From the NCBI RefSeq assembly GCF_003918875.1, contig NW_025767293.1, forward strand, positions 186,001-250,000: a stretch of DNA of 64,000 bases, in the 5' to 3' direction. Source of the stretch: Haliotis rubra (lineage: Eukaryota). Positions 7,254 through 41,874 of the stretch are shown in pieces (position 1 is the first letter of the stretch; every line of letters begins with the position of its first letter). The notes below the pieces were generated by a model, which ran no database searches, was not told where the DNA came from, and saw nothing but the letters and a program-made list of their open reading frames with translations. Position numbers and translations under genes: made by a program.

Positions 7254-7383
7254 TTATTCAGGACTGTTTCCCGGTTGTTGTTCGACGCTAGGAGGTCCCT
7301 GTGACCCTTGTTCTGAAGGGGGTTTGTTATTAGAGGTCCCTTCCGTCTTTCTTGACCTTGCACACAATGACTCAAGTGATTTT
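7254..7383 (-). CDS. EGF gene exon 14 (cytoplasmic tail, stop)
   Basis: Acceptor tcctttcag, phase 2; (R)KSLESLCARSRKTEGTSNNKPPSEQGSQGPPSVEQQPGNSPE*; AATAAA downstream. Confidence 0.72.
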
Positions 7384-10300
7384 CTGAAAGGATAAACAGA
7401 TGCTGTTGCAGTTTATGGCTATCTACTTGTAAGGGGAACAGGTGATGTAGGTTCCACTACACTAAATCAGAATCACATGTTCAATGAGCGAGTAGTGTAT
7501 GTAAACATCTGAAGTAATAGCGACATGTGACAGCTGTGATTGGATGAAATAGTGTAAGAATTTTTATGTTTTTTAAAAGCACAATGTCATCCATCCAGTA
7601 ATTTAAACTGACCGTGATTTTAAGTATTCAGTGCTGTCATTTTTATCAGCATGATTTGTGCTTATTGTGTGTACAGATATTTTCAAATAGGTGACATTTT
7701 GGGCGGAACAGGGGTTGGTGTGTTCCGCTTCCTGTGCTCGGAAAATTGGCAGGCTAAGTTAGCCGGAATTAGTCTTTTTATTGTAGTTTAAAGGCCAGAC
7801 TGATGTGTACATGGAATGGATGTTGACAGCCTGGGTGATTTTAAAAAAAATATAACTTTACTGACTGACTGAGTTTGGTTTTACGCCGGTTTTAGCAATA
7901 TTCCAGCAACATCACGGCGGGGGACACCAGAATGGGCTTCACACATTGTACCCATGTGGGGAATCGAATCCGGGTCTTCTGCGTGACGAGCCAACGCTAT
8001 AACCATTAGGCTACCCCACCGCCCATAACTTTACTATAGAAGTCTGTGGGAAAACATTTGGTGTTGTGTAACCTCTAGTCGTGTTAGGCACCGCAATGCG
8101 ATGTGCAGAGTTGCGTCCCTTGGGCACGCCAGTTCGCCCTGGTAATGTTTCGAGGATCGTACTGTTGTCTTGTAAACGTGGTAAACGTTTCAGATTGTTG
8201 GTTGGACTCAAGTGGTAAACATCTTCTGTCCTTCCACTTGATGCTGACACGTTGGGATATCTGAGATACTGTTCAAGCGGGGTAACTCACTCACTCACGC
8301 AGGTGTTACAATACCCGGAGTGGTTCTGAAGTGCAGGTTAGATAATGAATGTGACTGAATCAATTACTGGTGTTCCGGGTTGTGCATACGTCTACTGTTA
8401 TATGCAGTGTCTGTACATACTGGCAGTATATATCTTCTACTCTACATAATGTATATGGTTTTTCATTCCGTACTCTCACCTGTTCAGACAAGCCAGAAAA
8501 CCGAAAGTCAGAACCACGATTATTATGATCCAGACCCAGAAGAATAGTTTTGGAGAGGCTATATCTTGCTCTTCATGTTCCACGAGCTCGGTGTCTGTGA
8601 AAAAGGAGTCACTTGCACAAATAAGTAATTATTATCAACAACATTACTTGGATCTCACTCATCATTACAACTTGAAAAAATATGGCTTTGTCTACAACAC
8701 ACTACTTAAAATGTAGAGCTGGTGTTATTAGATTATAGACGGACGACTGGCTAGATATACTGGACATGATTGTGTTGACATGGGTCATATTACGGGACAC
8801 AGAAATGAAGCTTTCTTGTTTCCCATCTCCGTGTGATCTAAAATGTCATTTTGATACTAGAATGATGGCATTCATAGAATGATGCATTCATACTTAGCGG
8901 AAATTTTCCAGACCAAACTATTTACATGCTGCTGTCCCCACGAAGGTCCGGGTTAGAATATTGGTCTTCAGCAACCCACGCTTGTCGTAAGAGGCGACTA
9001 ACGGGATCGGGTGGTCAGGCGTACTGACTTGGTTGACACATGTCATCGGTTCCCAGTTACACAGAGCAATGTTCATGCTGTAGATCACTGTATAGTCTGG
9101 TCCAGACTTGATTATTTACAGACCGCCGCCATATAGCTGGAATATTGCTGAGTGTGGTGTCAAACTAAACTCACTCACTCACTCATGCTACCGTCATATA
9201 GTTTGAATACTAATGACTGCGGTGTTAACAAATAAACACGCACGAAAACTAACTAACCTACGACTGGTAGCAATACACATATTTCCCAGTTGTAACATGT
9301 AGAAGCGAAGCGAGTATTGTGACGATCAGTATTGTGACGATCAGTATTGTGACAGATTTTATGGTTATTCTAGCAGAGTCAACAAGAACTGGCTAACCAC
9401 TTATACCAATATGGGAAATCGAGCGATGATCTTTACTTATGATGTAAATGTTTTAACATATAGATACACATGCCACACATCAAGTAAGAATCCGGACACC
9501 GGGGTTCTCTCTCCGACTTTATGTATGTCTCAAGCTTCACTTATATATAACCGGGACATAAAATTATAAAATTGTTTAATATTTAAATTAAAAATGACCG
9601 ATGATTAAACTCTCAACATGACGTCATTATTTCGTAAATCATGCAAGGAGTAACTTTCAGCTTACGCTCTTCACAACGGGGACCTGTCCATCCATCTTTA
9701 CACTGGCTGTTGCAGTCACCGGTGACGTGGTGGCAGGACCCTGGTGTACATCCTCTACTACACAACCCTGAACAGTTTCGTCCGTATGTTCCGTCAATAC
9801 AAACTGCAGATGCAATGTGGTACATTGTAATAACTGCATCTGCTATATCATTATATACTACATATGGAAATGCTGCACACAACTCTCATTTCAGATATAG
9901 AATACCCATTGTAAACGATTGAAAAACACCAGAGGAAATAAAACGCTAAAACAAGTAGCAGACTACGGTGTGAACCGAACACCGGGCACCATACAGACTG
10001 ATAATAAAACCTCACTGTGTTCACATCTCCGACCTGTCCATCCGTCTTTACATTGATAGTTGCAGTCACCAGTGATGTGGTGGCAGGTCCCCGGTTTACA
10101 TCCTGGGTTACACTTCTGTGCACAGTCTCGTCCAAATGTTCCCGCATCACAGACTGAAAATGATGTACAGACATAGAGACAAACTGCCACATAACGCTGT
10201 TTAAGTGCCGGCAAACCATGACAATAAGAAGACGGAGGTCCATATAAGAGTAATCAAATAAATGCAATTGGAAAAGAAATACTAAAAAGCTTAACCCAGT

Positions 10301-13300
10301 TTACAATGAATATATGTATGGAAGGTATTTTATCTCTCATACATTTGAATTAAATCACTGCAACCATGTCATTGTCATTGTGGAACCATTTCGTTAATAG
10401 CGCTGACCGTGTCCATTTTTTTTGCCTCTATCCACTGAGTAACACCTGTTGAGATATTACCGTCTAACTGAAATATTTAAATTGACGCTGGTACCCACCG
10501 GATTGATGACGAAAACGTACTTTGTTTACATCGCTGCCCATTCCATCCGTCCTGGCACTGGTTGTCACAGTCACCTGTGACGTGGTGGCAAGACTCTGGT
10601 AAACACGTGGTACACGTCTGTGTACACTCATGTCCATATGTTCCGTCATTACAAGCTGCAGATGAAGCAATGAAACCCTGTGAAACAAGTGTTCACTGTA
10701 AGCAGTACAAGCTGCATCAGAAGCAATGGCACTCTGTGATACAAGTGTTCACTGTAAGCAGTGCAAGGTGCATCAGAAGCCATGGCACTCTGTGATACAA
10801 GTGTTCACTGTAAGCAGTGCAAGGTGCATCAGAAGCAATGGCACTCTGTGATACAAGTGTTCACTGTAAGCAGTGCAAGGTGCATCAGAAGCCATGGCAC
10901 TCTGTGAAACAAGTGTTCACTGTAAGCAGTACAAGCTGCATCAGAAGCCATGGCACTCTGTGATACAAGTGTTCACTGTAAGCAGTGCAAGGTGCATCAG
11001 AAGCCATGGCACTCTGTGATACAAGTGTTCACTGTAAGCAGTACAAGCTGCATCAGAAGCCATGGCACTCTGTGAAACAAGTGTTCACTGTAAGCAGTGC
11101 AAGGTGCATCAGAAGCCATGGCACTCTGTGATAAACAAGTGTACAAGCTGTCAGAAGCCATGGCACTATTGCAAGTGTTTATAAAAATGCATCAGAAGCC
11201 TGCGGACAACTGCGGACAGCTCGTATATTGTGTGTCGGAGAAATGTTGTCAACGATTTCCCCATATATGTCTTCTGTTAAATGCCTAGGTCACTGGATGG
11301 TCTCTGCTGGATGTAAAGAATGTAGGAATCTGCAAACGATGCTATTGCAGCAGCAGAAACGTATTTTCGTCTCGCAAGATGGAAAATTGTTTATATAACA
11401 ATATAGAGACTTCTTTAACTGAAGTATAGTACTATTTTGGGGGCAAGATAGTTTTTAAAAACTTAGGGGGATCCAAATTGTTTTGACATCCAACTTACCA
11501 GCTGACACGAAAAGGTCCAGGTATATCTATAAGCTGTTACCATACAATTCTTTAGATGTCAGCGCGATGTTATACCCGTCATCGGGCTTTATAATTAAAC
11601 ACACATTCACAGACGAGGAAGTGAACTTTACACCCATTGTATACATAAGAACTAGCATTCATCAGAGGAACTACCTTTGAACCTTTGTTTTTTCATTTAG
11701 GACTCATAGCAAAAAGTGGTCAAATAGAGATTAATGAGCTACTGTGACTACTGTAATGCTGTATTCTGTGTATCATTGCTGTCTGTACTTATCGAATTAT
11801 TAGTGTTTAACCTTTTATGTACACTCGTGTGCCATGCTGGAAAACAGCATGTTCTCTCATTCTGGAACAGTTCGTGTTCTTGTAATTAGGTGGTTTCTGT
11901 GTGTGTAGCTATTAGTCAGAAATGTCAAAATCAATATCTTTATGTCACGAGTTGATTCATGTAACCAAAATTAAATAAAACAAGAATTACATAACACAAC
12001 AATAATTATTCAAACACCACATGTATATCAGTTCCGTAATTTCAAGCTTAAATCTCAAACATGTCTGCTTTACACAATCTCCAAAATACACACACTATCT
12101 TGTTTTTAAAGCATTAAACCTGGCAATTTATATACAGCTGTAGGAAACAGTTCAAAATGCATTTGGGGATTTAGTTCAAACATGACGATTTTTGCATTTT
12201 CAAGGTTTGTAACAAATATCATATGTCCATTTATCTCATTTAATCTTTTAGACATGCGCAGAATATCACTATGAACAGTGTCTGCACATATAGTTTGTAT
12301 GCTGTATATATTCAAGACAACTGACTCAAATTAACAGTACTCTGATGTTGACTAACGTGAGCAGCTATATGATACAAACACTGACAACGGTACGTTAAAA
12401 CTTAACTCAGTGACACTGTACGACATACTTGATGTGCAGTTGGTTCCTGTCCAGCCAACCCTACATGTGCAGCTTCCATCAGTAGCGTTACAGATTCCTC
12501 CCTGACACCCAGCTGCACACCCCGTACAGTTTTGTCCGTCCATGTAAAAGCCGTCCTTGCATTCTGGAATGATATAGTAAAAGATAATTGCTTCAGTTCT
12601 ATGGTAATGACAAAATCAGGTCTATATGAAGATACCATCCTCATCCTGACTTTCGCTAACACCCGGTGTCATCACTAATTGTTGTTGATGATGATGATTT
12701 TTACGCTCATGATAATTTTTACGACTCTTTCACCTTTTATGCCTTTGAAATCTGTTTTGATGTGCACTGAAGCTGTTATTCTCAGGCGTTAACGTTTAAC
12801 AATTGTTCTGTTCTTGTGTGACTATGTATGATATTGTCGGGCGTACGGCATAGAATATATGTCAGTCTCGGACAGATCGTAAAGGTCTACTGCATATGGT
12901 TGTGTTGACAATGTTTGATTAGTTGTCAAAAAACGTCATGACTTTACATACCATTATGGATGAACAACTTCTTTATTACTACTCTAACTTTTTAATGAAA
13001 GAAGTTTACATACCATTGCAGTTACTTCCTGTCCAGCCATCTCGACAGCTACAGCTACCGTTGGCCACGTTGCATGTCTCCCTAACACATCCAGCCCCGC
13101 AGTCCACACAACTGTCTCCGTCCACGTAGAACCCGTCTCCGCACACTGGGGAACAAAGCGTTGTTGTGATCTAGGTGAGGAGACTCACGTTGGAGCACAG
13201 GAAACATTTTCTTTGACATACCTCATGTGGACATTTCGATATTTGACAAATGCCTCGTCAGCATAACATGCTTTCAAACATGCTTCTCTGATTCCTATGG

Positions 13301-16300
13301 TGTCCTATAAGTGCCATCGCGTGGCGCGTAAAAAAAGAACTACGTCGCCCACGACGTCGCATAAAAAATACTAAGTCGACGACGTCGCCCGTTATTATTG
13401 TAGTCAAAGTATATTTTACAAAGCGACGTCGCGCAAGACGTCGTCTTTTTTTACGCGCCACGCGATGGCAATTATAGGACACCATAGATTCCTGTTTGCT
13501 TCATCGTTATCCTGATTCGGAAACAAGGAAAGCTAACTCAGGAGGACATGTGGTGGTGTGTGGTTCTGTGCACTAAGCCCAGGTCCCACATCAGTTGAAG
13601 TTAAGCAACGTTGGTCATGGAGAGTCCTTGGATGGATGACCATATCTGGCAGATTGACTCCTGAGAAGTTTTAGGACTTCAGTCCTGCCCCACAACGAAT
13701 CACATATGACACATGTGGTCTCACCTAGGCAAGTGAGTTTTTTAATAAATTGCCTCTGTCCACCAAGCAGTGAATGGGTACCCGGTGAGATAGGCCATAT
13801 GGCTGTTAACCTTCTTGCTCCTCACACGCTGCTTGGGTTATCCGGGGTAATAATGTATTACCGCCTTGGAAACAGGTGCTTTATAAATAACCATTATTAT
13901 CAATAATCATGAACATAACGTTGAAAACTTGGTTCTCATGACCATTATCACTCCGATGTTTGACATGTTGTCACACTTGTAACGTCAGAATGAATCATAA
14001 CATACATGTGGAATAACGGTCGTCTGACTCGTTACTGATTACTCTTCTGAGGTTTTGATGTTTACATTTAGAATCCCTTAAAACAAATATGTCAGAAAAT
14101 ATCAATATTAGAACCTACACTCTTCACATCGCTGACCTATCCATCCGTCTTTACATTGGTTGTTGCAGTTACCGGTGATGTGGTGACAGGTCCCTGGTTT
14201 ACATCCTCGGTTACACTTCTCAGTACAATCCTGTCCATAGGTACCCTCATCACAAGCTGCAGATGATAATGTGCATTTGTACATGTTAATGTTAATAAAC
14301 GGCAAAATACATTCTAGATAGACTAATAAATTTGGCTTCAAAGGACTACACACAAAAACACACACTCACAAACATACACACCCACTCACACCCACCCCAA
14401 ACCACCTCACTCACTAACCCACTCATCCACTCACCCACCCACACATCCACACACCCACTTACTCACTTACCACTCCACTCACACCACTGAACAACACCAT
14501 TTAAAATCCAATTCCAAAACAACCATTGACATGAAATGTGACTCGGACTTCATGCACCCACTCGCATCCACTCACAAACATCCACACCCACTCACATCCA
14601 TCCCCACCTCACTCACTCACTCACCTACCCACTCACTCACTCACACCACTGAACAACACCAGTTAAAATCAAATTCTAATACAACCATTAAGATGACATG
14701 TGACTCGGACTCCATGCACCACATGGAGTAATGGTAAATCCTCACTGTGTTCACAGGTGGGACCTGTCCATCCATCGTGACACTGGTTGTCACAGTCACC
14801 GGTGACGTGGTGGCAGGAACCTGGTTTACATCCTGTGCTACACATCCCTGTGCAGTCTTGTCCATACCTACCCTCATCACAAACTGCAGAGGAAAAATGT
14901 CACATCCCGTTGGAATTATCCTCGGTAATATTGTATTTGACCAATGTATAACATTTCATTATTGATATCATATTCATATATAATTGGTAGATTATGTTGT
15001 CAACAATAGCCAAATAGAACATGTGACGTAAACCCGACTGGCAAACCATTCACCAGAGTCCCTATACACAACGTGTTCAAGGCACAATATGGCTAATATT
15101 TTGCTGATGTACCTGAAAATATTACCTCACGCACCTAAACGATTCAGTGAACTGACGTCGAGTATAGCAGGTGTTTTGTGGCTTATATGGTTATATGACA
15201 ATGCTAGGTTAAAACTTAACTCACTCACTCACTGACTCGCGTGCGACATACTTGATGTGCAGTTGGTTCCTGTCCAGCCAGCTTTACATGCGCAGCTTCC
15301 GTCAGTAGCGTTACAGATTCCTCCCTGACACCCAGCTGCACACCCGGTACAGTTTTGTCCGTCCATGTAAAAGCCGTCCTTGCATTCTGGAAGTAGGAAG
15401 ACTGTTCCTGTGACCAGTTATAAGTTTTATCGACTTTATAAAGGTATAAAGTTATCTTGAACATAACAGGTAGAAACACTGACTACTTACAGTGAAGAGT
15501 TATGCATACAGATGGATACACTCATCGCATGCAGTGCACAGTAATACCAATAATAGATTGTAATACCAACTGCATTAAGGTATACCAACTGCAGCCCTGA
15601 TTATCTGTAGCGTTATAACACTAATTGCACGGTAAGGCATATGGATTCCAACACTAATTGAATTCAGTACTCAGTGAGGCATACGGATTTACACAAATCA
15701 GGTATGCGGATTCTGCCATCCATAACATGTAGGATACTGTAAGCAACACGCATTGATTGAATGTAGCTTACAGTATACGGATTGTAACACTGATAAAGTG
15801 CAGGGCACAGTAAAGAATACAGATTATAACACTGATTATGTGTACCCCACAGTAAGGTATAAGTATTGCAACACGGGTCACATGACAAATATCCTAAGAA
15901 TTTATAACTCATACAGAATGTACAAAATAACACGTTTGCAAATAAATATTACATTTCGACATAAATATGTAAATAAATGTAGACTTTACATACTGTGGCA
16001 GCCAGTTCCTGTCCAGCCAGCTCTACAGGTACAGTTGCCGTCTCCAGAGTCACACACGTCCCCCTCGCATCCACCACCACATTTCACACAACCGTGGTCG
16101 TTTCCGTAGAAGCCGTCCATGCATTCTTTAAACAAAGCCTTGTGTCGGATAACGACGGATAATCAGGTTGTTAAAATAAATAAAAGCGAAAAAACATGAA
16201 CATAATCATAAGATAAAGTCACCTGTACAATTTCGATTATCACCACGCTCTCTTTAAACAAAGGCTTATGTTAACGACTAATAATCAAAGTATTAAGAAA

Positions 16301-19300
16301 CAATCTTAAATGCAAGCGAACAGAAAAATGAACATAATCATGAGATAACGTCCACTGTACAATTTCGAATATAATCATGCTCTCTTTAGACTGACCAATC
16401 TTAGTTTACGTCATTTTTTATCATTTTAATATTTGTATATTTTCCTCGGACAAGTCTGCAAAACATATTCAGAAACACTGAGTACATTGCAGTAAGGAGG
16501 ATGGTAGGGACATGACTGATGTCCCTTAAAACGATGAAATGGCGTTCTAGCTACACTGCTTTTATTGTATGTTTAGAGGGATTGTTAACAAATTTCTATT
16601 TCTTCGTATTGCAGTGTTAAGCTACCTTAACAGCACTATTTAACACATAATTTTCGAGAAAGAAACATTTGAAGTAAATCAAATCAAACTTTGATTTTTT
16701 TTTATTTTATGCTTTGGTCAATCGTACCTATCGTGCACCCATGTCCAGCCCAGCCAGGTGCACAGCTGCAGCGGCCGTCAGCAGCGTCACATTCTCCACC
16801 GTCACATCCGTCTCCACACTCTGTACATGCCTCTCCTTCCGTATAGAACCCAGGTGGACAGGCTGATACACAAAGACTCTGTTGAATTCCATTTTGCAAA
16901 CTTGAAACCGCGGAATTTGAGATGCAATGTCGACTAAAGGATCCATTGAAAGAAATTAACTGGTGGATGATCAAATCAAACTTCCTATGCTGTCTGAGAA
17001 TTATATCATGTTGATTGCCTTCGTCATTCTATAAAACTAGTGAATTGATATTAGATTGTTTGTTTGTCTGTTTAACGCTGCACCCAATATTCCAGCTACT
17101 AGTATATGGCTATCAATAATCGAATCTGGACCAGACAGTCCAAATATTACGACAAGCACGATATTGGAAAGGTTGAAAAGGGAATCCAATTGCTATTATA
17201 CAGCTTATTTAGACAAAGGTGTTACAAAACCGGTGTGTAAAGGATGGAATGCAACGACGAATTGGTAGTAAACGTAGAACTAGTAAACCTTGGTTTGGCG
17301 CTGAATGTGAATTTAAAAAGAAAGTCAGGTGCAGGACTTTGAATAAATCCAAAAAAGATAAGGGACCCGTTTCCCTCCGCGAATACGTGCATGCTAGAAA
17401 TAGTATGATGCTAATTGTCAAGTTAAAAAAGAACAACATCATGAACACAAACTTCGCTTGTTAGAAGAGTCACTTGAAAATCCTGAACGTTTTGTGGAAG
17501 TAATAAAAAAGTTTAAAATCCAACTTTATAGAAAATACTATTCCAAGTCATGAGTGGTACGATCACTTCAAAACTTTATTTAATGTTTCATACCCTGAGA
17601 AAGAATATATTTGTAACATGTTCAGGCCTTCCTCTGATTTTATTATGGACACTGATGTTGAAGATGAAATAACAACTGATATTCTAGATGCACCAATTTC
17701 AGAAGTTGAAATAAGAGGAAGTATTCGACATCTGAAGAATGACAAATCTGCAGGAATAGACAATATTATACCAGAGTTTTTCAAGAACGCGGAAGATGTG
17801 CTTACACCTTACCTACTAGTAATATTTAACATTAAGCTCGAAAATGCAACCTTCCCAGAACCATTGGATGCTGGTATTATCATTCGGTGTAACTACTTAA
17901 ATGATGTGCAACTAAACTATTGCCTTTGTACGTGTTTGAGATTTTTGTCGTGATCGACTGATAAATTACTGTGCATTATAAACACTGAGTGATTCTCTTA
18001 AGGTTAAGCTACAGAATAGCGTTTTGTCATACGATAGATATGACAAAACCATTGTTTCAGTTCATATTCACGTCAGTAAAAATAGCTATAATGAGTGTGA
18101 GAATAGTCTGAAAATTGGCACTGTTATTAATTAAAGCAATTATGGCCACAACGGCATGATACCACCAAGTCGGCGACATATATATTATAAATGGCAACAC
18201 AAAAATACATACATATGTGGTTGCACTACTTATGACTAATAATTCTTTTTGTATTCAAACGTTGAGAATATAAATCATGAATGAAGGGCACATGAATAAA
18301 CTCTATTAGTGAGAAGACATAACTATGCATATGTTTTATGTGTGTGTGTGTGTGTTCGTGTGTGTGTGTGTGTGTGTGTTCGTGTGTTGGGGGAGGGGGG
18401 AGTGTTTAGTTTAAAAAAAAATTATTCACAAAGTGAAAAGGATCGAGGTCAAGTTCTTGCAACTTATAAAACCCCTCTCCAAAGATATTTATAATACCTA
18501 AATATTACATCACAAGCAATTATTAGAAACACAGACAGAGGAAGATTGACAGTTCAGGGTAAGTTATATGATACAAAAGATGTATAGAAAGAAGACTGAA
18601 GTGTGTGTGGGGGTGGGGGTGATAGCCATGGCTTTGTAGTTTATGGCTGATTTAATAGTTTATACATTGGTCCTACCCACAGCTTAAAGATCGTCCTTGA
18701 GTCAGTGAGATGGGACTGTGCTCATAAGAGTTCATTTACCCATTGCCATTTTATCAGAATGTAAACATCTAAAGCGCTATTGAATCTGATTAATATCTAG
18801 AGCATGCTGATGCTGCATCGAATGTATACACACAAAAAACAATCATGTCGAAACAAAGCCACATGGAGTCAGCTCAGTTTCCTTGCTGCCTGGCCGTTAT
18901 GAAAGGTTACCTAGCTGTGTCACCAGCATGTCACACTGTATGACATTCCTTAATGTAATATCGCCATTGAAAAAGGAGTCTTATTGGCTCATTTGTAAGT
19001 GCAAACATTGGATAATGTGAAGGCCTGGGGGAATAAAACTGTTAATTGTCACTGGCATATGTAGTACTGTAAATGTGTCTAGTATTCTGAAACACTTTCG
19101 AAACATATTAAAAGTGAAAATACGGGTTAGAGAGAATCTCCAGCAACCCATACTTGTAGGGATCGGCAGGTCAGGCTCGCTGACTTGGCTGACACATGTC
19201 CTCTTATCCCAATTGCCTATATCGATGGCACTGATATTAAGCACTGGATTGCCTGGTCCAGATTCTATTATTTACAAACCGACATCATACAGCTGGAATA

Positions 19301-20667
19301 TTGCTGAAGGCAGCGTTAAACAACAAACAAACTGATGACGCATATTCGAATATATGTAATATTTGGGCCACAAAATCCACATTAAGTTCATATATGTTAA
19401 GGGGCTTGAGGTTGGAACAAATATTACGGTTATTGTGAGTTATAAACAACATAATTCACCACGAAAGTCAATGTTGCTGAAAGACATTTTGAATCACTTG
19501 GCTGGGAGGGGGTTAAAAGCGGCCGACAATAGAATACTGTAGTCATCACTCTACAGAAGTAGCAAAGGTTTCAACATACTCAGTGTACAGTAGACTCCTA
19601 GCCAGCCAGGCCTACAGGTACATTGTCCGTCTTCGCTGCTGCAGCCACCATCACAGCCCTCACTGCATTGTCCACGGCAGTCAACCCCATAACTCCCAGT
19701 CTCACATTCTTGGAGCAATTAAAGAAACAATAGACAGTTTAATTAAAATATATACTATCACGATGTAAGGGTGTTATACCCTTTTATCAGTTGTTAAATG
19801 TTGCAATTCATTTCTGTTAAATATTCAATATACATGTTGTACACCCTTTTATCAGTTGTTAAATGTTATAATTCATTTCTGTTAAATATTCCATATACAT
19901 GTTGCACACCCCTTTTGTCAGTTGTTAAATATTGCAATTCATTTCTGTTAAATATTCAGTATATGTTGTACACCCCTGTTATCAGTTGTTAAATGTTATA
20001 ATGTCAATTAAGAAACAGTATGTGTCTCCCTGTAAACAGATATAACTGCAGATATGGAGTTAAAGTAATATCAACTCGCTCACTATGAAAATTTGATTAG
20101 ACTCAGGAACTAAAGCTTGTTTTGCTACATGGTGTATTTTTCATATTAGATATACATTTTCTAAAATACTTTACAGTTCCAGTTATACGTGTTCAATGGT
20201 CATAAACCTATGGCTATCAGAATTATCAAAAGCCTGTGGGTGAGTGAGTGAGTTGGGTTTTACGCCGTGTTTTGCAATATTCAAGCAATATCACGGCGGG
20301 GGAAAATAGAAAATGGCTTCACACATTTTATCCATGTAGGGAATCGAAGGCGGGCCTTCGGCCTGACGAGCGAACTCTTTAACAACTAGGCTACCTCATC
20401 CCCCTGTCAAGAGCATTGTAATACTTTCCAGATAAAGGCAGTATATGAGTATATTCCGTTATTATAGCATACGATAGTAACAATTATATTTTTAACTGCA
20501 ACAAAAAAGTACAATCGAAAAAGCATATGAGAAATACAACAGGAGAGATTGAGCATGAGAAATGCTTACACTGAATGATATAGTGGAGGGCAGTGGTGAA
20601 AGTATCACTTACCAGCGCTTGGCTTACACTGAAGCAAGAAAAACCAAAGTACAAAGAAGCAGTGCAT
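7254..20667 (-). CDS. Multi-EGF-repeat type I membrane receptor (MEGF10/Draper/SCARF-like ectodomain), 14 coding exons, about 594 aa
   Basis: Exons 20667-20613, 19708-19580, 16862-16728, 16125-15994, 15386-15252, 14883-14746, 14256-14119, 13145-13014, 12563-12429, 10655-10521, 10153-10016, 9803-9666, 8594-8480, 7383-7254. All junctions are GT-AG and phase compatible; total 1785 nt open to TAA. Confidence 0.88.
7863..8024 (-). mobile_element. SINE family A copy
   Basis: tRNA-like head, TSD ataactttact. Confidence 0.9.
8480..8594 (-). CDS. EGF gene exon 13 (stalk and transmembrane helix)
   Basis: tttttcacag| TELVEHEEQDIASPKLFFWVWIIIIVVLTFGFLACLN(R) |gtgaga; phase 1 to 2. Confidence 0.88.
8937..9185 (+). 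mobile_element. SINE family B, full length
   Basis: Conserved ~250-bp body ending gctggaatattgctgagtgtggtgtcaaactaaac(tcac)n. Confidence 0.9.
9666..9803 (-). CDS. EGF gene exon 12 (EGF-like module 11)
   Basis: CIDGTYGRNCSGLCSRGCTPGSCHHVTGDCNSQCKDGWTGPRCEE; 138 nt, phase 1-1. Confidence 0.92.
10016..10153 (-). CDS. EGF gene exon 11 (EGF-like module 10)
   Basis: CDAGTFGRDCAQKCNPGCKPGTCHHITGDCNYQCKDGWTGRRCEH; 138 nt, phase 1-1. Confidence 0.92.
10521..10655 (-). CDS. EGF gene exon 10 (EGF-like module 9)
   Basis: CNDGTYGHECTQTCTTCLPESCHHVTGDCDNQCQDGWNGQRCKQ; 135 nt, phase 1-1. Confidence 0.92.
10651..11200. repeat. 56-bp minisatellite, about 9 copies, overlapping the exon 10 acceptor
   Basis: Unit tgtgatacaagtgttcactgtaagcagtgcaaggtgcatcagaagccatggcactc. 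Confidence 0.95.
12429..12563 (-). CDS. EGF gene exon 9 (EGF-like module 8)
   Basis: CKDGFYMDGQNCTGCAAGCQGGICNATDGSCTCRVGWTGTNCTS; 135 nt, phase 1-1. Confidence 0.92.
13014..13145 (-). CDS. EGF gene exon 8 (EGF-like module 7)
   Basis: CGDGFYVDGDSCVDCGAGCVRETCNVANGSCSCRDGWTGSNCN; 132 nt, phase 1-1. Confidence 0.92.
13295..13487. mobile_element. Palindromic MITE
   Basis: About 45-bp TIRs ctatggtgtcctataa.tgccatcgcgtggcgcgtaaaaaaaga; apparent 4-bp TSD attc. Confidence 0.85.
13541..13905 (+). mobile_element. Old SINE containing a 5S-rRNA-like segment and an L2-like tail
   Basis: gaagttaagcaacgttgg...cttggatggatgacc resembles the 5S internal control region; central ctctgtccaccaagcagtgaatgggtacc; tail gtgctttataaataaccattattat. 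Confidence 0.6.
14119..14256 (-). CDS. EGF gene exon 7 (EGF-like module 6)
   Basis: CDEGTYGQDCTEKCNRGCKPGTCHHITGNCNNQCKDGWIGQRCEE; 138 nt, phase 1-1. Confidence 0.92.
14355..14722. repeat. (CACT/CACC)-rich tract with a two-copy duplication
   Basis: ctcacaccactgaacaacacca...atgtgactcggact.catgcacc at about 14478 and 14640. Confidence 0.8.
14746..14883 (-). CDS. EGF gene exon 6 (EGF-like module 5)
   Basis: CDEGRYGQDCTGMCSTGCKPGSCHHVTGDCDNQCHDGWTGPTCEH; 138 nt, phase 1-1. Confidence 0.92.
15252..15386 (-). CDS. EGF gene exon 5 (EGF-like module 4)
   Basis: CKDGFYMDGQNCTGCAAGCQGGICNATDGSCACKAGWTGTNCTS; 135 nt, phase 1-1. Confidence 0.92.
15994..16125 (-). CDS. EGF gene exon 4 (EGF-like module 3)
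   Basis: CMDGFYGNDHGCVKCGGGCEGDVCDSGDGNCTCRAGWTGTGCH; 132 nt, phase 1-1. Confidence 0.92.
16728..16862 (-). CDS. EGF gene exon 3 (EGF-like module 2)
   Basis: CPPGFYTEGEACTECGDGCDGGECDAADGRCSCAPGWAGHGCTI; 135 nt, phase 1-1. Confidence 0.92.
   Translation of the reverse strand, partial: PVHLGSIRKERHVQSVETDVTVENVTLLTAAAAVHLAGLDMGAR
17150..17885 (+). mobile_element. Degenerate LINE ORF2 fragment (pre-RT region), intronic and antisense to the gene
   Basis: KPWFGAEC and LDAPISEVEIRGSIRHLKNDKSAGIDNIIPEFFKN...YLLVIFN...FPE motifs, broken by frameshifts. Confidence 0.8.
19115..19331 (+). mobile_element. SINE family B copy (diverged)
   Basis: Aligns to the other B copies. Confidence 0.8.
19580..19708 (-). 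CDS. EGF gene exon 2 (EGF-like module 1)
   Basis: CETGSYGVDCRGQCSEGCDGGCSSEDGQCTCRPGWLGVYCTL; 129 nt, phase 1-1. Confidence 0.9.
19775..20002. repeat. About 65-bp tandem repeat, about 3.5 copies
   Basis: Unit acccttttatcagttgttaaatgttgcaattcatttctgttaaatattc... Confidence 0.9.
20241..20404 (-). mobile_element. SINE family A copy
   Basis: Aligns to the other A copies. Confidence 0.85.
20613..20667 (-). CDS. EGF gene exon 1 (signal peptide)
   Basis: ATG at 20667; MHCFFVLWFFLLQCKPSA then G|gtaagt, phase 1. Confidence 0.82.
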
Positions 20668-28641: not shown

Positions 28642-30646
28642 TTAAATATCATCTTCTGAAGATGCAGGATCTGGTTTCTTTGGCGATGGTTGGCCTGGTA
28701 ACCTCATTGCAAGTTTTTCCTGGAGTTGCTTCGTTACTTGTGAAAACGCCATGAAATTGACTGGAGTAGGACCAGATTTGGGTATTGCTTTGGTTTGTGT
28801 GGTGAGTTTGGAATCTTTTCGTGGTGGTGGAGGTGGTGGACCGCCTTTGCCTGCTGGTTTCAGTGATGAGGAAGTTGGCCGTTGACCAGAATTTTGATAG
28901 TCCCCATCAAAGGTCTGTAGATCGTCACTAGATGTGGAGCCTCGGCAGCTAGATGAGGAGCCTCGGTGGCTAGATGAGGAGCCTCGGCGGCTAGATGAGG
29001 AACCTCGACTATCTGAAAATGTGCTATCTCTGTCACCAAACCTATGATCAGCTAGCTTTGACCTGATAGGCTGTGGTGATATCTCGGGTGGTCCATGGCA
29101 GGCCTGTTTTGGCAGTGGTGGTAGTGGACGTTTCTGTATTGGTATCGTTTCATTTGAAGACATTTCATTTTGACGACCAGAACTGCACAAGGAAGTAAGG
29201 GATGGGTATTCTTTCACATCAGGTGGGTCTGATGGTTTATCCGTTTCTCTTAAGTTTCCAGGACTCTTGGTTAATTTTGGTATTGGAGGGAAAGAAGGCA
29301 GTTTGGGAACTGTTGATACCTCTTCATTTTCAGCACCCTTTTCCTTCATTCCAAGCAGTTTCTCCTTATTTTCATAGGTATCCGACAATCTCGGGATTGG
29401 TGGAAAAGATAAATCATCAACCTTAGGTTCTCTTTGACGTGAACGACGAGCATCCGAGAGGTTCCGCGAAAGATGACTGGTTTTGGCTTTTAGTGGCAGT
29501 CGTGGAAGTGTAGATGGTCCGGATGGTTGCATTTGACCACGAGTATAAGAGAACTGCCTTTTCTGGGACTCCATTTCAATACTTGTCAGTTCATCATATT
29601 CTGAAGACTGTGATGTTGTAGAAGCACGCCCAAAGTGAGCATCATGTGTTTTGGTAGTTTCGTTTGATGCTGGATGTAACTCGAGCAAGTTTCTTGAAAG
29701 AGGCAAGGTTTTCGTTTTAGGCAAGAGTGATACAGTGGATTTTCCTGCTGACCCCGGCAGATCACAGTCATCAAGAGATTCCTTATTATTCTTTGAGGAA
29801 AAATTATCACTGATCATATCAATGATGTTTTGAGACATTTCCTGGATATTTGGCACACCACTTTCCAATATGGGATGGGTAACGTCCTCTTCGGGTATGA
29901 ACATCCCTTCTGTTTCCATGGAAACAACTGAGCCAGCAGATGCGTACACGGACCCAAAGTCCGCATCTGCTGCGGGTGGCATGTCGAGCCAGGATTTTCT
30001 GAAAAGTGTAGACATTGCAGATTGACGTGAATTCGCATCTAATGATTCTCGAAGGATAACATCATCTCCCTCTTCCGGAGTAACTCGTGTGAGGACAATA
30101 TCCATGTTTTCGTCTTCATCAGGTACGAATGTGTCTGTTTTCTTAGTGTTGGAAAGGTACGCCATCTTGCTGGTTTCGAAAGTAGATACTGTGCTGTCTC
30201 CCCTGCTGTCGTCTACATGAACGTAATCATTTGTTAGATTTGAACTGACACTTCCACGTGCCAGGGCTCCTTTGTAGTTAGATTTAAAACGATTATCGCT
30301 TTTACGCCATCCACGACCGAGTTTCTTCAGTAGGATTCCGCTCAATGTTGAACATTTCTTTGGGGGTTGAGGGGGTTGAGGCCTACCAGTTACTGCAAAT
30401 TCTGTTACTGCTTTAATAGATTCTTCAGAAGATGCTGCACCACAAGAATCATTTGACACAGGCCTTTGTGCACCTAAATACTCATACGAATGACCGTCAC
30501 TCTCATTTGATGATGTGTCTGAGTTGCTTTCGCTTCTCTTCTGCTTTCTTAAGGGTACAGCATCACCCTGGTTCTCGTAGATTGCAGCAATGTCCAATAT
30601 GCTGAAGGACAGGTCATTCAGCCTTTGGTCTCGTTTGCAGCGTCTC
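28642..30646 (-). CDS. Adaptor A terminal exon (cytoplasmic tail)
   Basis: 2-kb uninterrupted ORF; acceptor ccttttcaaag; motifs YENQ, YEYL, YVHV, YDEL, YENK, YQNS, RPLPPLP, PPPPPPRK. Confidence 0.92.
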
Positions 30647-33060
30647 CTTTGAAAAGGTTGAAACAAGTCATATCAAGAAAGGTACCAACTATGTAAAATA
30701 GTTTTTTCTTTATACAGGATATACTATAACATACAAATTCAAAACATTTGTACAGATATACCAATAGAAGTATATACACACCGCGGTTCAAAGGCTACAA
30801 GGTGCTTTTAAGCTATGATTTTGAGAGACAGCTGTCTGGACTCGGTGATAAGAGTACTAGTATATGTGTGAGACATTTCACGAATCAAACAACACACTTT
30901 TGTGAAAATCACCACATAAAAGAGAAGCTAATCAATTACTTGTATGTTGTCACAGCGAATGTTCTCAGCAGTTTTCGTCTTGACAGGACGTCCAGTGAAC
31001 AATTTTAAAACAATTATTCAGTATTCTTTGGATCAAATTGTTCCTTTCTTGTGAGAATATATCTACTTCCTGTATAAAATGACAAGCTATTTGTACTTAC
31101 TTGGTAAACAACAGGATAGCCCATACGAGGAGGAGAAGCAGGATATATACGCCTATGAACCCCAGCGATATATATTCTGGAAAAGGAGTAAATAAAAAGG
31201 TACATGTGACATTTTGTAGAAACAACTAGCTACGTTAGAATCGGCCCTAATTTAATCAGATATACCTACTGGTTATACAAGGTTCGGTTGCATTTACATG
31301 ATTCTGAAAAAGGATTGGGTTTCTTTAAAACATATTTCAATCACCAGCTCTACTTTGTTAAAAAAATTCTGAAAAATCGAAATTGTGAAAACATTATTGA
31401 ATTCATTTGATGCTGAGTGCTGACAGGTTATAGGAACATTAAATCAAACAAGGAAGATTGACTGAACATTGTATCCACAACCCATAAAAACTCAAGAGTG
31501 TCATTTGTTATTAAAATATGCAACTGGTTAATAATCACTTTATTTGCATAATGGACGCTTCCACGTTATATACGATGGCGACCCCAAGGTTTCTGTTGAT
31601 AATGTCATGTAACGCGAATTTGTTAATTAACGGTATTTTGGAAAGTTATATTTTCTGTTACGCTTAACGATAATCCTGGAGCATCACACTTAGATACATA
31701 AAAGGAAGGAATATGAAACATTCAGCTCTAGAGTGCAATCACTCTTAGTTATCTAGAACCCGTGAAAGTCCGTGTTAGAATTGCTCTTTAGTAACCCATG
31801 CTTGTCGTAAGAGGCGACTAATAGGATCGGGTGGTCAGGCTCGCTGACTTGGCTGACACACGTCATCGGTTCCCAATTGCGTAGATCGATGCTCATGCTG
31901 TTGATCACTGGATTGTCTGGTCCAGACTCAATTATTTACAGACCTCCGCCATATAGCCGGGATATTGCTGAGTGCGGCGTAAAACTAAACTCACTCACTC
32001 TGACTAAGAGGGAATGTCCCGACTCATGAAACGTTAGATATATTCAAATGTACAACTTCCGGTTGTGGCATTTCGTCAAGGACAGTATTCCAGTTTTATC
32101 AAGGAGTGTCAGCATGATGTGTGAATGATGCATTTCTCTTATTTAACACTTCGGTGAATCCCATAAGTAAGTCATATGATGCTATGACAACATATACGAC
32201 TGAGCGAACTCCCACTCATGTTAAGTATCGTTAACACAAGCTGCAACATGTCATATCGATTGAGTACGGGTACGATACTATGATGCTATACATCGAGTGA
32301 CGACGTCAATGAGGAGACGTGTGTATGGCTGCCCAGGGTGGTCGCACTCACCATTGATGACGTGTCCCCTGTCTCATGTCTTATTATATGACTCTTTATG
32401 CACTTTTTGAATGAAATCTAATTTGTGTAATTTTTAATTTTGACCCCTGGACCCTTTCTAGGTACCGATCCACAAGGCGTATGAAGCGTTACGACCTGTG
32501 GTAATTCTATGGTGTATCATAGACTTCCGAATGTCGTAGCGTTCAGGACCCAGCATTACAAAGAATTTTCAGTCAAATTGTTGGAAAATGATTTCTGTTT
32601 GTAAAATAATTATCATAAATCTCACAAACATCTTTGTTTCTATTTTTTCGGTCAAGTGAGGTCGGTGATAACTTTCTTTTGCCCGGTAGCTTAGTAACTG
32701 TAACTTGAAAACGGTAAAAACACACACTACCAAACCTCTGCAACAATGTAACCTTGTCATCAACAGCTATGACACTCAGAAAATGAATAATTCGACTCGA
32801 ACTTGAGCTATCATTAATATGAATTTACGATTCAAACATATACAGCAAAACGAAATCCCATACATGTTTAGTATCGTAAAACAATTTGCAACATGTCACT
32901 TCACCTATGAGCAAAGTCATATAGATTGCTTTTCCATGATTCATATTTGGGCAACCATCAGCCCAAGTCTAATGCGAGGCATTAAGTTTGTCTAGTATAT
33001 TAAATAAGAACTCTACATACCCGGTCTCATGTCTTTAAAGGACCATCCGTCCCAAGACAT
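28642..33060 (-). CDS. Single-pass membrane protein with a tiny ectodomain and a long Tyr/Pro-motif tail (transmembrane-adaptor-like, adaptor A), 3 coding exons, about 706 aa
   Basis: Exon 33060-33021 MSWDGWSFKDMRP, G|gtatgt, with an in-frame TAG two codons upstream of the ATG. Exon 31176-31101 (E)YISLGFIGVYILLLLLVWAILLFT(K)|gtaagt. Exon 30646-28642 is the 674-aa ORF from RRCKR onward. Phases 1 and 2 are compatible. Confidence 0.85.
31101..31176 (-). CDS. Adaptor A transmembrane exon
   Basis: ccttttccag|...|gtaagt, 76 nt, hydrophobic stretch of about 23 aa. Confidence 0.88.
31431..32000. repeat. About 570-bp direct duplication, copy 2; includes SINE B at 31759-32000
   Basis: Matches 27898-28474; no TSD after this SINE. 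Confidence 0.92.
33021..33060 (-). CDS. Adaptor A first coding exon
   Basis: 40 nt, ATG with an upstream in-frame stop, phase-1 donor gtatgt. Confidence 0.7.
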
Positions 33061-36957: not shown

Positions 36958-37127
36958 GGGCGGTGGGGTAGCCTAGTGGTTAAAGCGTTGGCTCGTCACG
37001 CCGAGGACCCGGGTTCGAATCCCCACATGGGTACAATGTGTGAAGCCTATTTCTGGTGTCCCCCGCCGTGATATTGCTGGAATATTGCTAAAAGCGGCGT
37101 AAAACCAAACTCAGTCAGTCAGTCAGT
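36958..37127 (+). mobile_element. SINE family A inserted into an antisense SINE B (36906-37200)
   Basis: TSD tccagctatatgg duplicates SINE-B sequence. Confidence 0.92.
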
Positions 37128-38762: not shown

Positions 38763-40071
38763 CACCCGTGGTATAAACCTGAATACCGTTCCTTTATTAG
38801 CATTATCATGGGGGTGGGGCCGCGGGGGTAGCCTGGTTGTGAAAGCATTTGCTCTTCACGCCGAAGGCCGGTTTCGATTCCTCAATTGCATACAATGTGT
38901 GAAACTCAAACCACTACAAAGGGCATTTGGCTGCCAAACAGTATGCCGTTTATTAAAACTTTCTCTAAGTTGTCAACGACGTCGCCACTACCACCAAGTA
39001 CAGATAAACCTGAAATAGGTAGGACTGATGCAATGTTAAAGGATAGCGTGTCACATTGATATTTCATGATCATCCTAAAAATCGCTAAAGTTAGGATTAA
39101 GCCGGTGTGCAAATGTAATCGATGATATTTTTCCGGTCACAAATTAATATATACAAATGTAAAAGGAGAGAAGTTCATTTCAAAACAATAATTTCCAAGT
39201 AATATTAGTATTCATATGAATATAAAAGAAAGAATGCTGCAGCGGACCAGAATATATAACTCCTGCCAGGTAAATGCAAATATTAAAACACAACTCCGAG
39301 TAAGAGTACAGTCAGTGCCACGCCCATTTTGAAAGTGCTAGTTTATCTTAAGATGATTCCATGATGTTTCGACAAAAGATAATAAACTCTCTTTTTTGAA
39401 ACTCAATATAATATATTCACATTGACATATTTTTGCTGATTACGGGTAAAGATGTGAAGTCTTACTAACTGCTCAGTATCATTATGTAATATTCTTAATA
39501 TTGGGACGAATCCACACAGCAACAAGGTCCTTTCACTTCTAAGACATCCCCCCAAAATTGTTTATGTACATACGTCCATTTGAATGGACATCCCAGCCCC
39601 ACCCCTCCTCCACTTTTCCCATATAAATCTAATGATCAATGTGACAGGATACATTTACGTATTCTCAGTGAGACGATTCCCTCTATATGAGAATAACGTG
39701 GTATCATGTCATATCCCACGGAGTCACGTACACACGAGTATCCATACACGTATTAACTAAAGAAAACAATGGGGCAAAACTGTTCACATCCGCGTAAAGT
39801 TGAGAAAAGTCGGCCGTGTACGAGAATACAACGGAAACGGAAAAGTGACAGGTGCATCCAAGAAATGTATTTTTAATTTTAGTCTGTCGACAAGTTGGGT
39901 TTCCGATATATTTTTGAAAAAGATATTTTACATAAGTAGCGAACTGTATCCAATTTTGCTATTGTTAAAAACACCTGGCATTGTAACTGTTAGTGCAGTC
40001 AAAATCAGACAGCGATATTATAGGCTGGTTTACATGACAGGACCAGAACCATTAAGTGAAGACTGACATGG

Positions 40072-40073
<2 letters not shown>

Positions 40074-40153
<80 letters not shown>

Positions 40154-40161: not shown

Positions 40162-40196
40162 GGTGTTATATTAATTGCTTGTATTTTCATTTCCAG

Positions 40197-40284
40197 TGAA
40201 TAACATCATCATTGCATGGACAATTGCTGGGATTGGAATGGCCCTTGCCTGTTTCTTCCTATTACTATATCTATGCTTGAAATG
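40197..40284 (+). CDS. Adaptor B transmembrane exon
   Basis: 88 nt, phase 1 to 2, hydrophobic helix ending in CLKC. Confidence 0.87.
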
Positions 40285-40449
40285 GTAAGTCTTTCCAAAT
40301 AAATCTTGATTTGTGAAATACGTTTTCCCTATGGCATCAACAGATAATATACGCACACTGGAAATGATACCTTTCACAAAGTCGTAATAACTAAAAACGA
40401 GACAAAAGTGTGACATGGATTCTGTTACGGTTTAAATCAGTGACCAACC

Positions 40450-40480
<31 letters not shown>

Positions 40481-41874
40481 GAATTTGTAACGCGCCAATC
40501 TCACGCCAGCTGGTATGCTCATGGCGCTACAAGTAAAGTTATTTCTTGCTTTTGTTTTAAGTTTTACGTTGTTTGTGATAGTATATGCCGTATGTATTCA
40601 TTTCTTATTCCAGTAAAGACAAGTGTCACGGATGTTCAAGATTTGCATCAGCCTTTCCATCAGATATCGCTACCTTCTACAGGCAAAACTCTTGGGTGGA
40701 CTGTGACCACGAGTACGAGCGTATAAGCTTACAGGACAGGTCCCGGGAGAAAGACACTGTATGCAGCAGTCTACAACCGCATCATGAGGCGCGTCCGGGT
40801 GGGGAGAAAGGAGAAGACTATATAGATCCCCGAGCTTCATCATCAACAGAACATGTCGTAGATGATGTTAGGATATCCAGGTTATCCCATCTTCTGAGAA
40901 CATCGTTCTGGAGTAAAACCAACTCTGAGGAGGTTTTAGAATCTGACCACATACCAACATGTGGAAGCAGCGGGCAAAGGAGAACTCGAAGCTGCCGCAA
41001 GGTGAAGTCAACTGATATTTGTTCGAATACTCTCACTGCGGGGCATTTCATACCAGACTCGGGGGAGATTCGTGCACGGGGACTACCATCCGGAACAGCA
41101 GAAACAATGCCGGATGTCACAGACAGCATGGTTGACATTTTTCAAGAAATCTTCAATCCTTCCAACAACACTCTTAGAAGCCTGCTTCTCAGAACAATTC
41201 ACCCCGCAACTGAAAAAAATAAAAGTCTATCCAAACGTCTCTCTAAGTCTGAGACAGATGTCACCATTGCCAAAACATTCAGATCGTTCGGCAATACAGA
41301 CTACGATCCCTCTACAGACCCACAAATACAAAGTGGCGATGATGACCATTATGTCGCTGTCTCCGATATCAGAGTAACGCCTATACCAAAACGACGAAAA
41401 TCATTGTCCCGGAAGAAACACATCCTTGATGATAAGCAAACGGAAAACGAGTCTGAGCTCAGAAAATTGCCCGGCAGAAGTTTAATTAAATATATTACAA
41501 TCCCCATGTTCGAGGAAAGAAGAGAAGCAAGTATGCCTGTTCCGAGATCCAAACCCATGAGCCCCAGGCAGTGTCAACCAAGCAGCATCTTCAAGACTTC
41601 CTCTGACAAGAAAGGAGGTGGTGAATCTCCCACAAATCGTATGATAGAGGAACACGTACAAGCACCTGCGATGCATCTTGACACCTATGAAAATGAAATC
41701 CTAAGTGGAGTAGGCAGTCAAGAGAATCCGCAAAGCTTTCATGGATCCTTCAGGCGGAGTGTGCAAAAAGCAAGAAATGCTACATGTCTAGACGGACAAG
41801 CAAAAACAGGAAAAGAATATTCGAACGTAAGGATGGTCGTGAAGAATTTGTCATGCTCAATCGAAAACATTTGA
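40197..41874 (+). CDS. Transmembrane-adaptor-like protein (adaptor B), paralog of adaptor A, about 449 aa; 5' exon uncertain
   Basis: Exon 40197-40284 (x)NNIIIAWTIAGIGMALACFFLLLYLCLK(C), acceptor ttttcatttccag, donor gtaagt. Exon 40614-41874, acceptor tttcttattccag, in frame with the 429-aa ORF. Confidence 0.85.
40614..41874 (+). CDS. Adaptor B terminal exon (cytoplasmic tail)
   Basis: 1.26-kb ORF; motifs YERI, YIDP, YVAV, IKYITI, YENE, YSNV. Confidence 0.9.

What the first reader, a model, noticed from the sequence alone, without database searches (positions are those of the whole stretch)
7254..41874. Possible split receptor system: EGF-repeat receptor with no signalling tyrosine clustered with signalling tails that have no ectodomain
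Seen: the EGF gene ends in a 43-aa tail with no tyrosine. Established: Draper/CED-1/MEGF10 signal through NPxY and YxxL motifs in their own tails. Seen: its neighbours are TM-plus-tail proteins, and all three genes use the same phase-1/phase-2 TM exon followed by one terminal exon. Inference: recognition and signalling may be divided between separate genes, or the adaptors arose from receptor genes by ectodomain loss. Caveats: no TM helix has a charged residue, so DAP12/FcR-gamma-style pairing is not supported, and phase 1-2 TM exons are common in general.
Basis: inference. Interest (0 to 1): 0.75.

Follow-up and report, generated by a model that had tools for sequence, protein, structure and literature searches.

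The report
Abalone EGF receptor beside two adaptor-like genes
In blacklip abalone a short-tailed EGF-repeat surface protein sits next to two abalone-only membrane proteins that look like signalling scaffolds; all three genes are real, but nothing beyond their adjacency shows that they work together.

Summary
The window is Haliotis rubra DNA. Gene A (minus strand, 20667-7254) encodes 594 aa: a signal peptide, eleven 8-Cys EGF repeats (one per phase-1 exon), a TM helix and a 43-aa tail with no tyrosine. RNA contigs show the last four splice joints and read through the stop codon. Genes B (706 aa) and C (435/449 aa) each have a tiny ectodomain, one TM helix and a long disordered tail with several tyrosines. 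All three TM exons are phase 1 to phase 2 and are followed by one terminal exon.

The interpretation stays unproven.
- An exhaustive profile search of 1.84 billion proteins found B/C-like tails only in B and C, so origin by ectodomain loss has no support.
- B and C occur only in Haliotis.
- The order C-B-A is kept in H. asinina, and B-C in H. rufescens. That is expected within one genus.
- There are no TM charges and no ITAM.
- In H. asinina the gene that starts with the orthologues of A's exons 1-2 is annotated as 1297 aa with two tyrosine-phosphatase domains. A may therefore be a short-tailed derivative or isoform of an EGF receptor phosphatase.

I could not search for A's full-length relatives, because its spliced protein has no reference. 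Earlier scan notes report EGF receptor arrays with phosphatase or Tyr tails elsewhere in this genome.

The parts
20613..20667 (-). Gene A exon 1: start codon and signal peptide (MHCFFVLWFFLLQCKPSA), ends in phase 1
   Evidence: Sequence. The annotated CDS start maps here. 83% identical to exon 1 of the H. asinina gene.
9666..19708 (-). Gene A, eleven EGF exons, all phase 1-1, one 8-Cys EGF repeat each: 19580-19708, 16728-16862, 15994-16125, 15252-15386, 14746-14883, 14119-14256, 13014-13145, 12429-12563, 10521-10655, 10016-10153, 9666-9803
   Evidence: Exon model. Alignment A2 has 8 invariant Cys and two repeat subtypes. The closest solved repeats are Tie2 and SCARF1 EGF. Joints of the last three exons are seen in RNA contigs.
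8480..8594 (-). Gene A TM exon (115 nt, phase 1 in, phase 2 out)
   Evidence: Sequence. RNA joints 9666|8594 and 8480|7383.
6742..7383 (-). Gene A terminal exon: CDS 7254-7383 (stop at 7254-7256; the 43-aa tail has no Tyr), then a 3' UTR covered by RNA contigs to at least 6742, with sparse pieces down to about 5233
33021..33060 (-). Gene B exon 1 (MSWDGWSFKDMRP, no signal peptide, ends in phase 1)
   Evidence: Sequence. Protein P0001.
31101..31176 (-). Gene B TM exon (76 nt, phase 1 to phase 2)
   Evidence: Sequence. P0001.
28642..30646 (-). Gene B terminal exon: a 667-aa disordered tail with conserved YxN, YExL and SxYDEL sites, RPLPPLP, a poly-Pro run, a conserved C-terminal block and an EDD[IV] end
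   Evidence: dN/dS 0.25-0.34. 56-70% of its sampled words are held by four apparent RNA runs.
40197..40284 (+). Gene C TM exon (88 nt, phase 1 to phase 2)
   Evidence: Sequence. P0004 and P0005.
40614..41874 (+). Gene C terminal exon: CKDKCHGC right after the TM helix, then a 419-aa tail
   Evidence: Intact in H. asinina. dN/dS 0.39-0.41.
38943..39018 (+). Candidate alternative first coding exon of gene C (…SPLPPSTDKPEI, ends in phase 1), resembling the N-terminus of the H. rufescens protein
   Evidence: Sequence compared by eye with P0005. It is not part of the 449-aa product on record.

Best explanation
These are three separate, neighbouring membrane-protein genes, not a demonstrated receptor-adaptor unit. 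Gene A is a short-tailed member of the abalone family of receptors built from 8-Cys (Tie2/SCARF1/MEGF-type) EGF repeats. It can bind through its ectodomain but carries no signalling motif of its own. I take it to be a non-signalling derivative of an EGF-repeat receptor tyrosine phosphatase, or a short isoform of one. It would act as a decoy or as a co-receptor that pairs through its EGF ectodomain with full-length relatives (inference). Genes B and C are fast-evolving, Haliotis-restricted proteins that work like vertebrate transmembrane adaptors. They would be anchored N-out without a signal peptide, probably palmitoylated on juxtamembrane Cys, phosphorylated on conserved Tyr, and would recruit SH2 and SH3 partners (inferred from motifs only). 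Shown: the gene models, transcription of A's short-tail form, and the restriction of B and C to Haliotis. Inferred: every functional step.
For: - A's 594-aa model matches the length on record, and the short-tail joint and stop are seen in RNA contigs.
- The introns upstream of the terminal exon are empty while the 2 kb downstream of the stop is covered. This fits a true terminal exon with a long UTR.
- The H. asinina gene at the syntenic place, whose exons 1-2 are 83-84% identical to A's, is annotated as 1297 aa with EGF plus two Y_phosphatase domains. 1297 minus A's 551-aa ectodomain and TM leaves about 746 aa, the size of a tandem-PTP cytoplasmic part.
- B and C have no Pfam family. Their only relatives are in three Haliotis species. 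They are under purifying selection.
- B's Atlas model is disordered (pLDDT 0.41), and its nearest feature-neighbours are short-ectodomain TM adaptors: UL135, LIME1/PAG, A36R and SCIMP (a lead only).
- B keeps YxN at two sites, YExL, SxYDEL and RPLPPLP in all three species. C keeps CxxC and YERI.
Against: - The H. asinina model comes from a submitter annotation that also missed gene C, so the EGF-phosphatase join could be two genes fused by the predictor.
- I could not see the DNA left of the window or A's full-length relatives.
- Tyr residues in B (8 of 12 invariant) are no better conserved than the protein as a whole (64% invariant).
- The adaptor-like function rests on motifs alone.
- Conserved C-B-A order and the presence of A and B in one RNA sample are compatible with coupling.
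Confidence: 0.55

Rival explanations
1. Split receptor: A recognises a ligand and passes the signal to B and/or C, which supply the tyrosine motifs.
For: A's tail has no Tyr, and this is the tail seen in RNA. B and C have Tyr-rich tails and no ectodomain. C-B-A order is kept in H. asinina. Sample X2 holds both A and B transcripts.
Against: There is no TM charge, no ITAM and no extracellular Cys for pairing. B and C have almost nothing outside the membrane to contact A. Synteny within one genus and co-occurrence in bulk RNA are null expectations. B and C have no paralogues, whereas earlier scan notes (unverified) report many EGF receptors in this genome, so no general pairing rule can exist. 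A's H. asinina orthologue is annotated with its own phosphatase domains.
Confidence: 0.1
2. In H. rubra too, A is a full receptor tyrosine phosphatase. The phosphatase exons would lie left of the window, and the 43-aa tail would be an alternative short isoform.
For: The H. asinina orthologue is modelled with two Y_phosphatase domains and the right length arithmetic. Earlier scan notes report EGF-repeat phosphatase receptors elsewhere in this genome (unchecked leads).
Against: There is no phosphatase signature in window 1-7254. The longest product on record for the H. rubra gene is 594 aa. The only listed joint leaving the TM exon goes to 7383. However, contigs drop rare forms and three joints were not shown.
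Confidence: 0.25
3. B and C arose from EGF-receptor genes by loss of the ectodomain exons.
For: The layout is shared: a phase 1-2 TM exon followed by a single terminal exon.
Against: The exhaustive profile search found no protein with a B/C-like tail behind any ectodomain; the single extra hit, a plexin-like protein at E 7.5e-4, is spurious. There is no sequence similarity between A's TM or tail and those of B or C. The shared phases have a chance of roughly 0.07.
Confidence: 0.05

Closest known systems
Draper / CED-1 / MEGF10 / SCARF1 engulfment receptors
   Same: Type I membrane proteins with a row of 8-Cys EGF repeats. A's repeat profile matches the SCARF1 and Tie2 EGF repeats among solved structures.
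   Different: A has no EMI domain: the signal peptide runs straight into EGF 1. Its tail has no NPxY, no YxxL and no Tyr at all. It is not an orthologue of these receptors.
Vertebrate transmembrane adaptor proteins (LAT, PAG/Cbp, LIME, NTAL, SIT, SCIMP)
   Same: B and C have a very short N-out segment without a signal peptide, one TM helix, juxtamembrane Cys (CxxC in C), and a long disordered tail with YxN, YxxL and proline motifs. A language-model search puts LIME1/PAG/SCIMP clusters among B's neighbours.
   Different: There is no sequence homology. No Pfam LAT/PAG/LIME1/SCIMP hit was found, and there are no relatives outside Haliotis. Phosphorylation, palmitoylation and binding partners are untested.
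Receptor-type tyrosine phosphatases with EGF-repeat ectodomains in abalone
   Same: The H. asinina gene orthologous to A at its 5' end is annotated as EGF repeats plus two phosphatase domains. Earlier scan notes describe such receptors in this genome.
   Different: The H. rubra transcript seen here stops 43 aa after the membrane, and no phosphatase exon lies in the window.
Polymorphic clusters of single-pass transmembrane genes in Biomphalaria snails (PTC1/PTC2)
   Same: These are gastropod genomic clusters of single-pass membrane genes with assorted ectodomains. One PTC2-linked gene carries a weak SIT-adaptor domain hit (PMC10635097).
   Different: No homology was tested or claimed. Those clusters are defined by extreme polymorphism and a link to parasite resistance. 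Here I saw only a handful of variants.

Membership tests
Draper/CED-1/MEGF10 | N-terminal EMI domain | tested here: not met
   The 594-aa model has an 18-aa signal peptide followed directly by EGF 1, leaving no room for an EMI domain.
Draper/CED-1/MEGF10 | Row of 8-Cys EGF repeats plus a single TM helix | tested here: met
   Eleven repeats with 8 invariant Cys. Matches to SCARF1 and Tie2 EGF repeats. TM exon at 8480-8594.
Draper/CED-1/MEGF10 | NPxY and YxxL motifs in the receptor's own tail | tested here: not met
   The tail has no Tyr. This tail is the one seen in RNA contigs.
Transmembrane adaptor proteins (LAT/PAG type) | Very short ectodomain, single TM helix, no signal peptide | tested here: met
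   P0001-P0005. The ectodomain is 4-25 aa.
Transmembrane adaptor proteins (LAT/PAG type) | Juxtamembrane CxxC palmitoylation motif | tested here: inconclusive
   C has CKDKCHGC or CRGC. B has a single Cys (RRCKR). Lipidation cannot be tested here.
Transmembrane adaptor proteins (LAT/PAG type) | Sequence membership in a LAT, PAG, LIME1, SIT or SCIMP family | tested here: not met
   No Pfam hit at E up to 0.1. The exhaustive search found only Haliotis B and C.
Transmembrane adaptor proteins (LAT/PAG type) | Inducible Tyr phosphorylation that recruits SH2 proteins | not testable with these tools
   Only motifs are available: YxN at two sites, YExL and SxYDEL conserved in B; YERI in C.
DAP12 / FcR-gamma ITAM adaptors | Charged residue in the TM helix and an ITAM | tested here: not met
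   No charged TM residue and no Yxx[LI]-x6-12-Yxx[LI] pattern in B or C.
Receptor-type tyrosine phosphatase | Cytoplasmic PTP domain (HCx5R) | tested here: inconclusive
   None in window 1-7254, and the transcript ends at 7254. The H. asinina orthologue is annotated with two. DNA left of the window could not be read.

The most novel reading that the evidence does not exclude
The conserved C-B-A block is a functional module. An EGF-repeat receptor phosphatase line (full length in H. asinina, short-tailed in H. rubra) would control the phosphorylation state of two genus-specific LAT/PAG-like scaffolds encoded next door. This would be an invertebrate counterpart, arisen independently, of the CD45/CD148-adaptor relationship.
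Probability: 0.08. Interest if true: 0.7.

Novelty: new member of a known kind. Interest (0 to 1): 0.3.

Why it matters
If A truly signalled through B or C, it would be the first invertebrate example of a recognition chain paired with ectodomain-less tyrosine scaffolds that lacks the charged-TM rule of vertebrate immune receptors. On present evidence the solid results are more modest. Abalones carry two lineage-restricted, selected, adaptor-like membrane proteins with no relatives elsewhere. An EGF-repeat receptor line appears with a phosphatase tail in one species' annotation and with a bare 43-aa tail in another's transcripts. That is a tractable case of how receptor families make non-signalling variants.

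Tried and rejected
1. Pfam scans of the B and C tails and of single EGF exons gave no family for B or C and only sub-threshold EGF hits.
2. I tested whether B and C are homologous.
   - BLASTP finds only the TM plus juxtamembrane stretch (E 7e-4).
   - hhalign gives probability 7.5%.
   - HMMs of one gene do not score the other above shuffled copies.
   - Ordinary alignments are no better than shuffles.
   - A cheap-gap collinear test gives z 3-3.8 in two of four settings.
   - Paralogy is therefore suggestive only. It rests mainly on the motif SxSxxDIAxIY at the same distance from the membrane, the shared exon layout and the head-to-head position.
3. A motif scan for phosphatase exons in the window found none.
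4. The search for full-length relatives of gene A was left out, because its spliced protein has no reference and long sequences may not be typed. A workaround failed: an alignment of the eleven exon translations under a long unrelated first row (A5) returned only that first row's own protein. This used the last word-search call to no effect.
5. Scan-note look-ups by sequence and by words were blank.
6. Literature searches found no paper on abalone EGF phosphatase receptors or on mollusc LAT-like adaptors.
7. H. rufescens gave no information on A: the 10 kb downstream of B holds only repeats.
Full report
**Source and layout.** Protein searches identify the window as Haliotis rubra contig QXJH01000592.1. 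The window runs from about position 186,001 to 250,000 of that record. The finding covers three genes: A on the minus strand (20667-7254), B on the minus strand (33060-28642) and C on the plus strand (coding 40197-41874, annotated from 37440).

**Gene A.** Stop-free Cys-rich frames mark eleven EGF exons on the minus strand. Choosing phase-1 acceptors and donors, plus a signal-peptide exon, a TM exon and a terminal exon, gives a 14-exon CDS of exactly 594 aa. That is the product length on record for the gene beginning at window 20667.

- The protein reads: 18-aa signal peptide, eleven repeats of 43-46 aa with eight invariant Cys in two alternating subtypes, a short acidic stalk, a TM helix and a 43-aa tail without Tyr.
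- The repeat profile matches the EGF repeats of Tie2 and SCARF1 best among solved structures. An Atlas look-up of one repeat lands on mollusc EGF_laminin/EGF_PEAR1L clusters.
- There is no EMI domain.
- Exons 5/9, 6/12 and 7/11 are 82-89% identical at the DNA level, so the row grew by exon duplication.

**RNA support for the short tail.** Four runs of one study behave as RNA, because their contigs are spliced. Laid on 5200-11199 they show the joints 10521|10153, 10016|9803 and 9666|8594 in three samples and 8480|7383 in two. One contig runs from the TM exon across the joint, through the stop at 7254, to 7052. Unique intron sequence between these exons has no cover, while 5233-7200 downstream of the stop is covered at exon-like depth. 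This fits a genuine terminal exon with a long 3' UTR; AATAAA signals lie near 7095 and 6688. No other joint from the TM exon was listed, but contigs drop rare forms and three joints were not shown.

**Genes B and C.** B's 2-kb terminal ORF finds LOC124255109 (706 aa, 100% identical) and single orthologues in H. asinina (84%) and H. rufescens (68%). C finds LOC124255100 (435 aa isoform, 449 aa longest product) and a 474-aa H. rufescens orthologue. C's terminal exon is also intact, though unannotated, in H. asinina.

- B is made of three coding exons: 13 aa, a 76-nt TM exon and a 2002-nt terminal exon.
- C has an 88-nt TM exon and a 1258-nt terminal exon, with at most about 25 aa in front.
- Both TM exons, like A's, enter in phase 1 and leave in phase 2.
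- Neither protein has a Pfam family.
- B's Atlas model is disordered (pLDDT 0.41). Its nearest neighbours by language-model features are short-ectodomain TM adaptors: UL135, LIME1/PAG, A36R and SCIMP. These score 0.77-0.90 and are only a lead.
- dN/dS is 0.25-0.34 for B and 0.39-0.41 for C, so both are real, selected, fast-evolving genes.
- Conserved in all three B proteins: IAAxY[EQ]N, HSYExL, SxYDEL, YPSL, Y-Q-N, RPLPPLP, a PPPPPPRK run, a C-terminal block and an EDD[IV] end.
- Conserved in both C proteins: CxxC next to the membrane, YERI, EDYI and HYVAV.
- Tyr residues are not better conserved than the rest: in B, 8 of 12 Tyr are invariant against 64% of all columns.
- There is no ITAM and no charged TM residue.

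**Are B and C related to each other?** The evidence is weak. It consists of BLASTP E 7e-4 over TM plus juxtamembrane, hhalign probability 7.5%, no HMM signal above shuffles, and z 3-3.8 in a cheap-gap collinear test under two of four settings. The motif SxSxxDIAxIY at the same distance from the membrane, the identical exon plan and the head-to-head position make an old duplication likely but unproven.

**Test of 'ectodomain loss' and of fusion proteins.** A profile of the five B and C sequences was run by HMMER against 1.84 billion cluster representatives with no length filter. It returned only the B cluster, the C cluster and one marginal hit (E 7.5e-4), which is a plexin-like PSI/TIG protein. 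At HMMER's sensitivity no known protein joins this kind of tail to an EGF ectodomain or any other. B and C have no further paralogues.

**Synteny.** H. asinina is collinear with the window from C through B to the first two exons of A. H. rufescens keeps C-B head to head, but the 10 kb downstream of B holds only repeats, so A's position there is unknown. Conservation inside one genus is the null expectation.

**The phosphatase lead.** In H. asinina the gene that begins with the orthologues of A's exon 1 (83%) and exon 2 (84%) is on record as 1297 aa, with EGF_laminin/EGF_PEAR1L hits followed by two strong Y_phosphatase hits. A's ectodomain plus TM is 551 aa. The remaining roughly 746 aa fit a tandem-phosphatase cytoplasmic part and leave no room for a second ectodomain. 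That annotation is a submitter's and it missed gene C, so a predictor fusion is possible. In H. rubra no phosphatase signature lies in window 1-7254, and the longest product on record is 594 aa. Earlier scan notes (unchecked leads) report arrays of EGF-repeat receptors in this genome ending either in phosphatases or in abalone-only Tyr tails. The most economical reading is that A belongs to that receptor family and is a short-tailed derivative or isoform.

**Expression together.** Run X2 holds A's exons and 70% of the sampled words of B's terminal exon. At most four runs per study are listed, so nothing can be said about the other samples or about C. This is no test of co-expression.

**Verdict.** The functional reading is not supported by anything beyond adjacency, and one of its two branches (ectodomain loss) failed a direct test. 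I rate a dedicated A-to-B/C signalling unit at about 0.1. I rate a hidden long phosphatase isoform of A in H. rubra at about 0.25. I rate the plain reading at about 0.55: three neighbours, with A a non-signalling variant of an EGF receptor phosphatase line and B and C orphan adaptor-like scaffolds.

**Limits.** Gene A's spliced protein has no reference, so its full-length relatives were not searched, and a workaround failed. DNA left of the window could not be fetched. Exons 1-9 of A rest on the length match with the annotation, not on reads.

Noticed in passing
window 8525, 9717, 9718, 10046, 10055, 10565, 10611, 10616, 10623: RNA contigs of three individuals differ from the reference at nine sites in gene A's last three EGF exons and its TM exon. 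Eight of the nine change the amino acid, and several are shared by two or three samples. The numbers are too small for a test (P about 0.3 against a 3:1 expectation). The pattern fits weak constraint or diversifying selection on the ectodomain.
   Followed up: partly
window 7862-8024, 20237-20404, 33663-33831, 34906-35055, 36954-37128, 43101-43249, 50816-50961, 57773-57936: A tRNA-like SINE of about 165 bp is present in at least eight copies, and also in H. rufescens and H. asinina. RNA contig depth over it is about 1e5, so it is abundantly represented in transcripts.
   Followed up: no
window 1509-1706, 8942-9165, 28253-28452, 31778-31985, 42474-42712, 52738-52943, 56960-57205, 59999-60245: A second short interspersed repeat family of about 200 bp is shared with the other two abalone genomes and also lies at high depth in RNA contigs.
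   Followed up: no
window 45899-49379 (-): Fragments of a non-LTR retrotransposon: RNase H-like and reverse-transcriptase-like ORFs in an AT-skewed stretch.
   Followed up: no
window 35298-36182 (-): Decayed Tc1/mariner-type transposase ORFs (…SPIEHLW… motif) lie between the 5' ends of genes B and C. The 4.4 kb between the two genes is therefore largely repeat-derived and is not a compact shared promoter.
   Followed up: no
window 10647-11180: A minisatellite of about 56-bp units in the intron just upstream of gene A's EGF exon 10. Its last unit overlaps the start of that exon.
   Followed up: no
window 40070-40150: A long (GA)n microsatellite lies about 50 bp upstream of the acceptor of gene C's TM exon.
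   Followed up: no
L003 654-1997 (H. asinina): Gene C's terminal exon is intact in H. asinina (76% identical over 428 aa), but no gene is called there. That annotation is incomplete, which tempers trust in its 1297-aa EGF-phosphatase model.
   Followed up: partly
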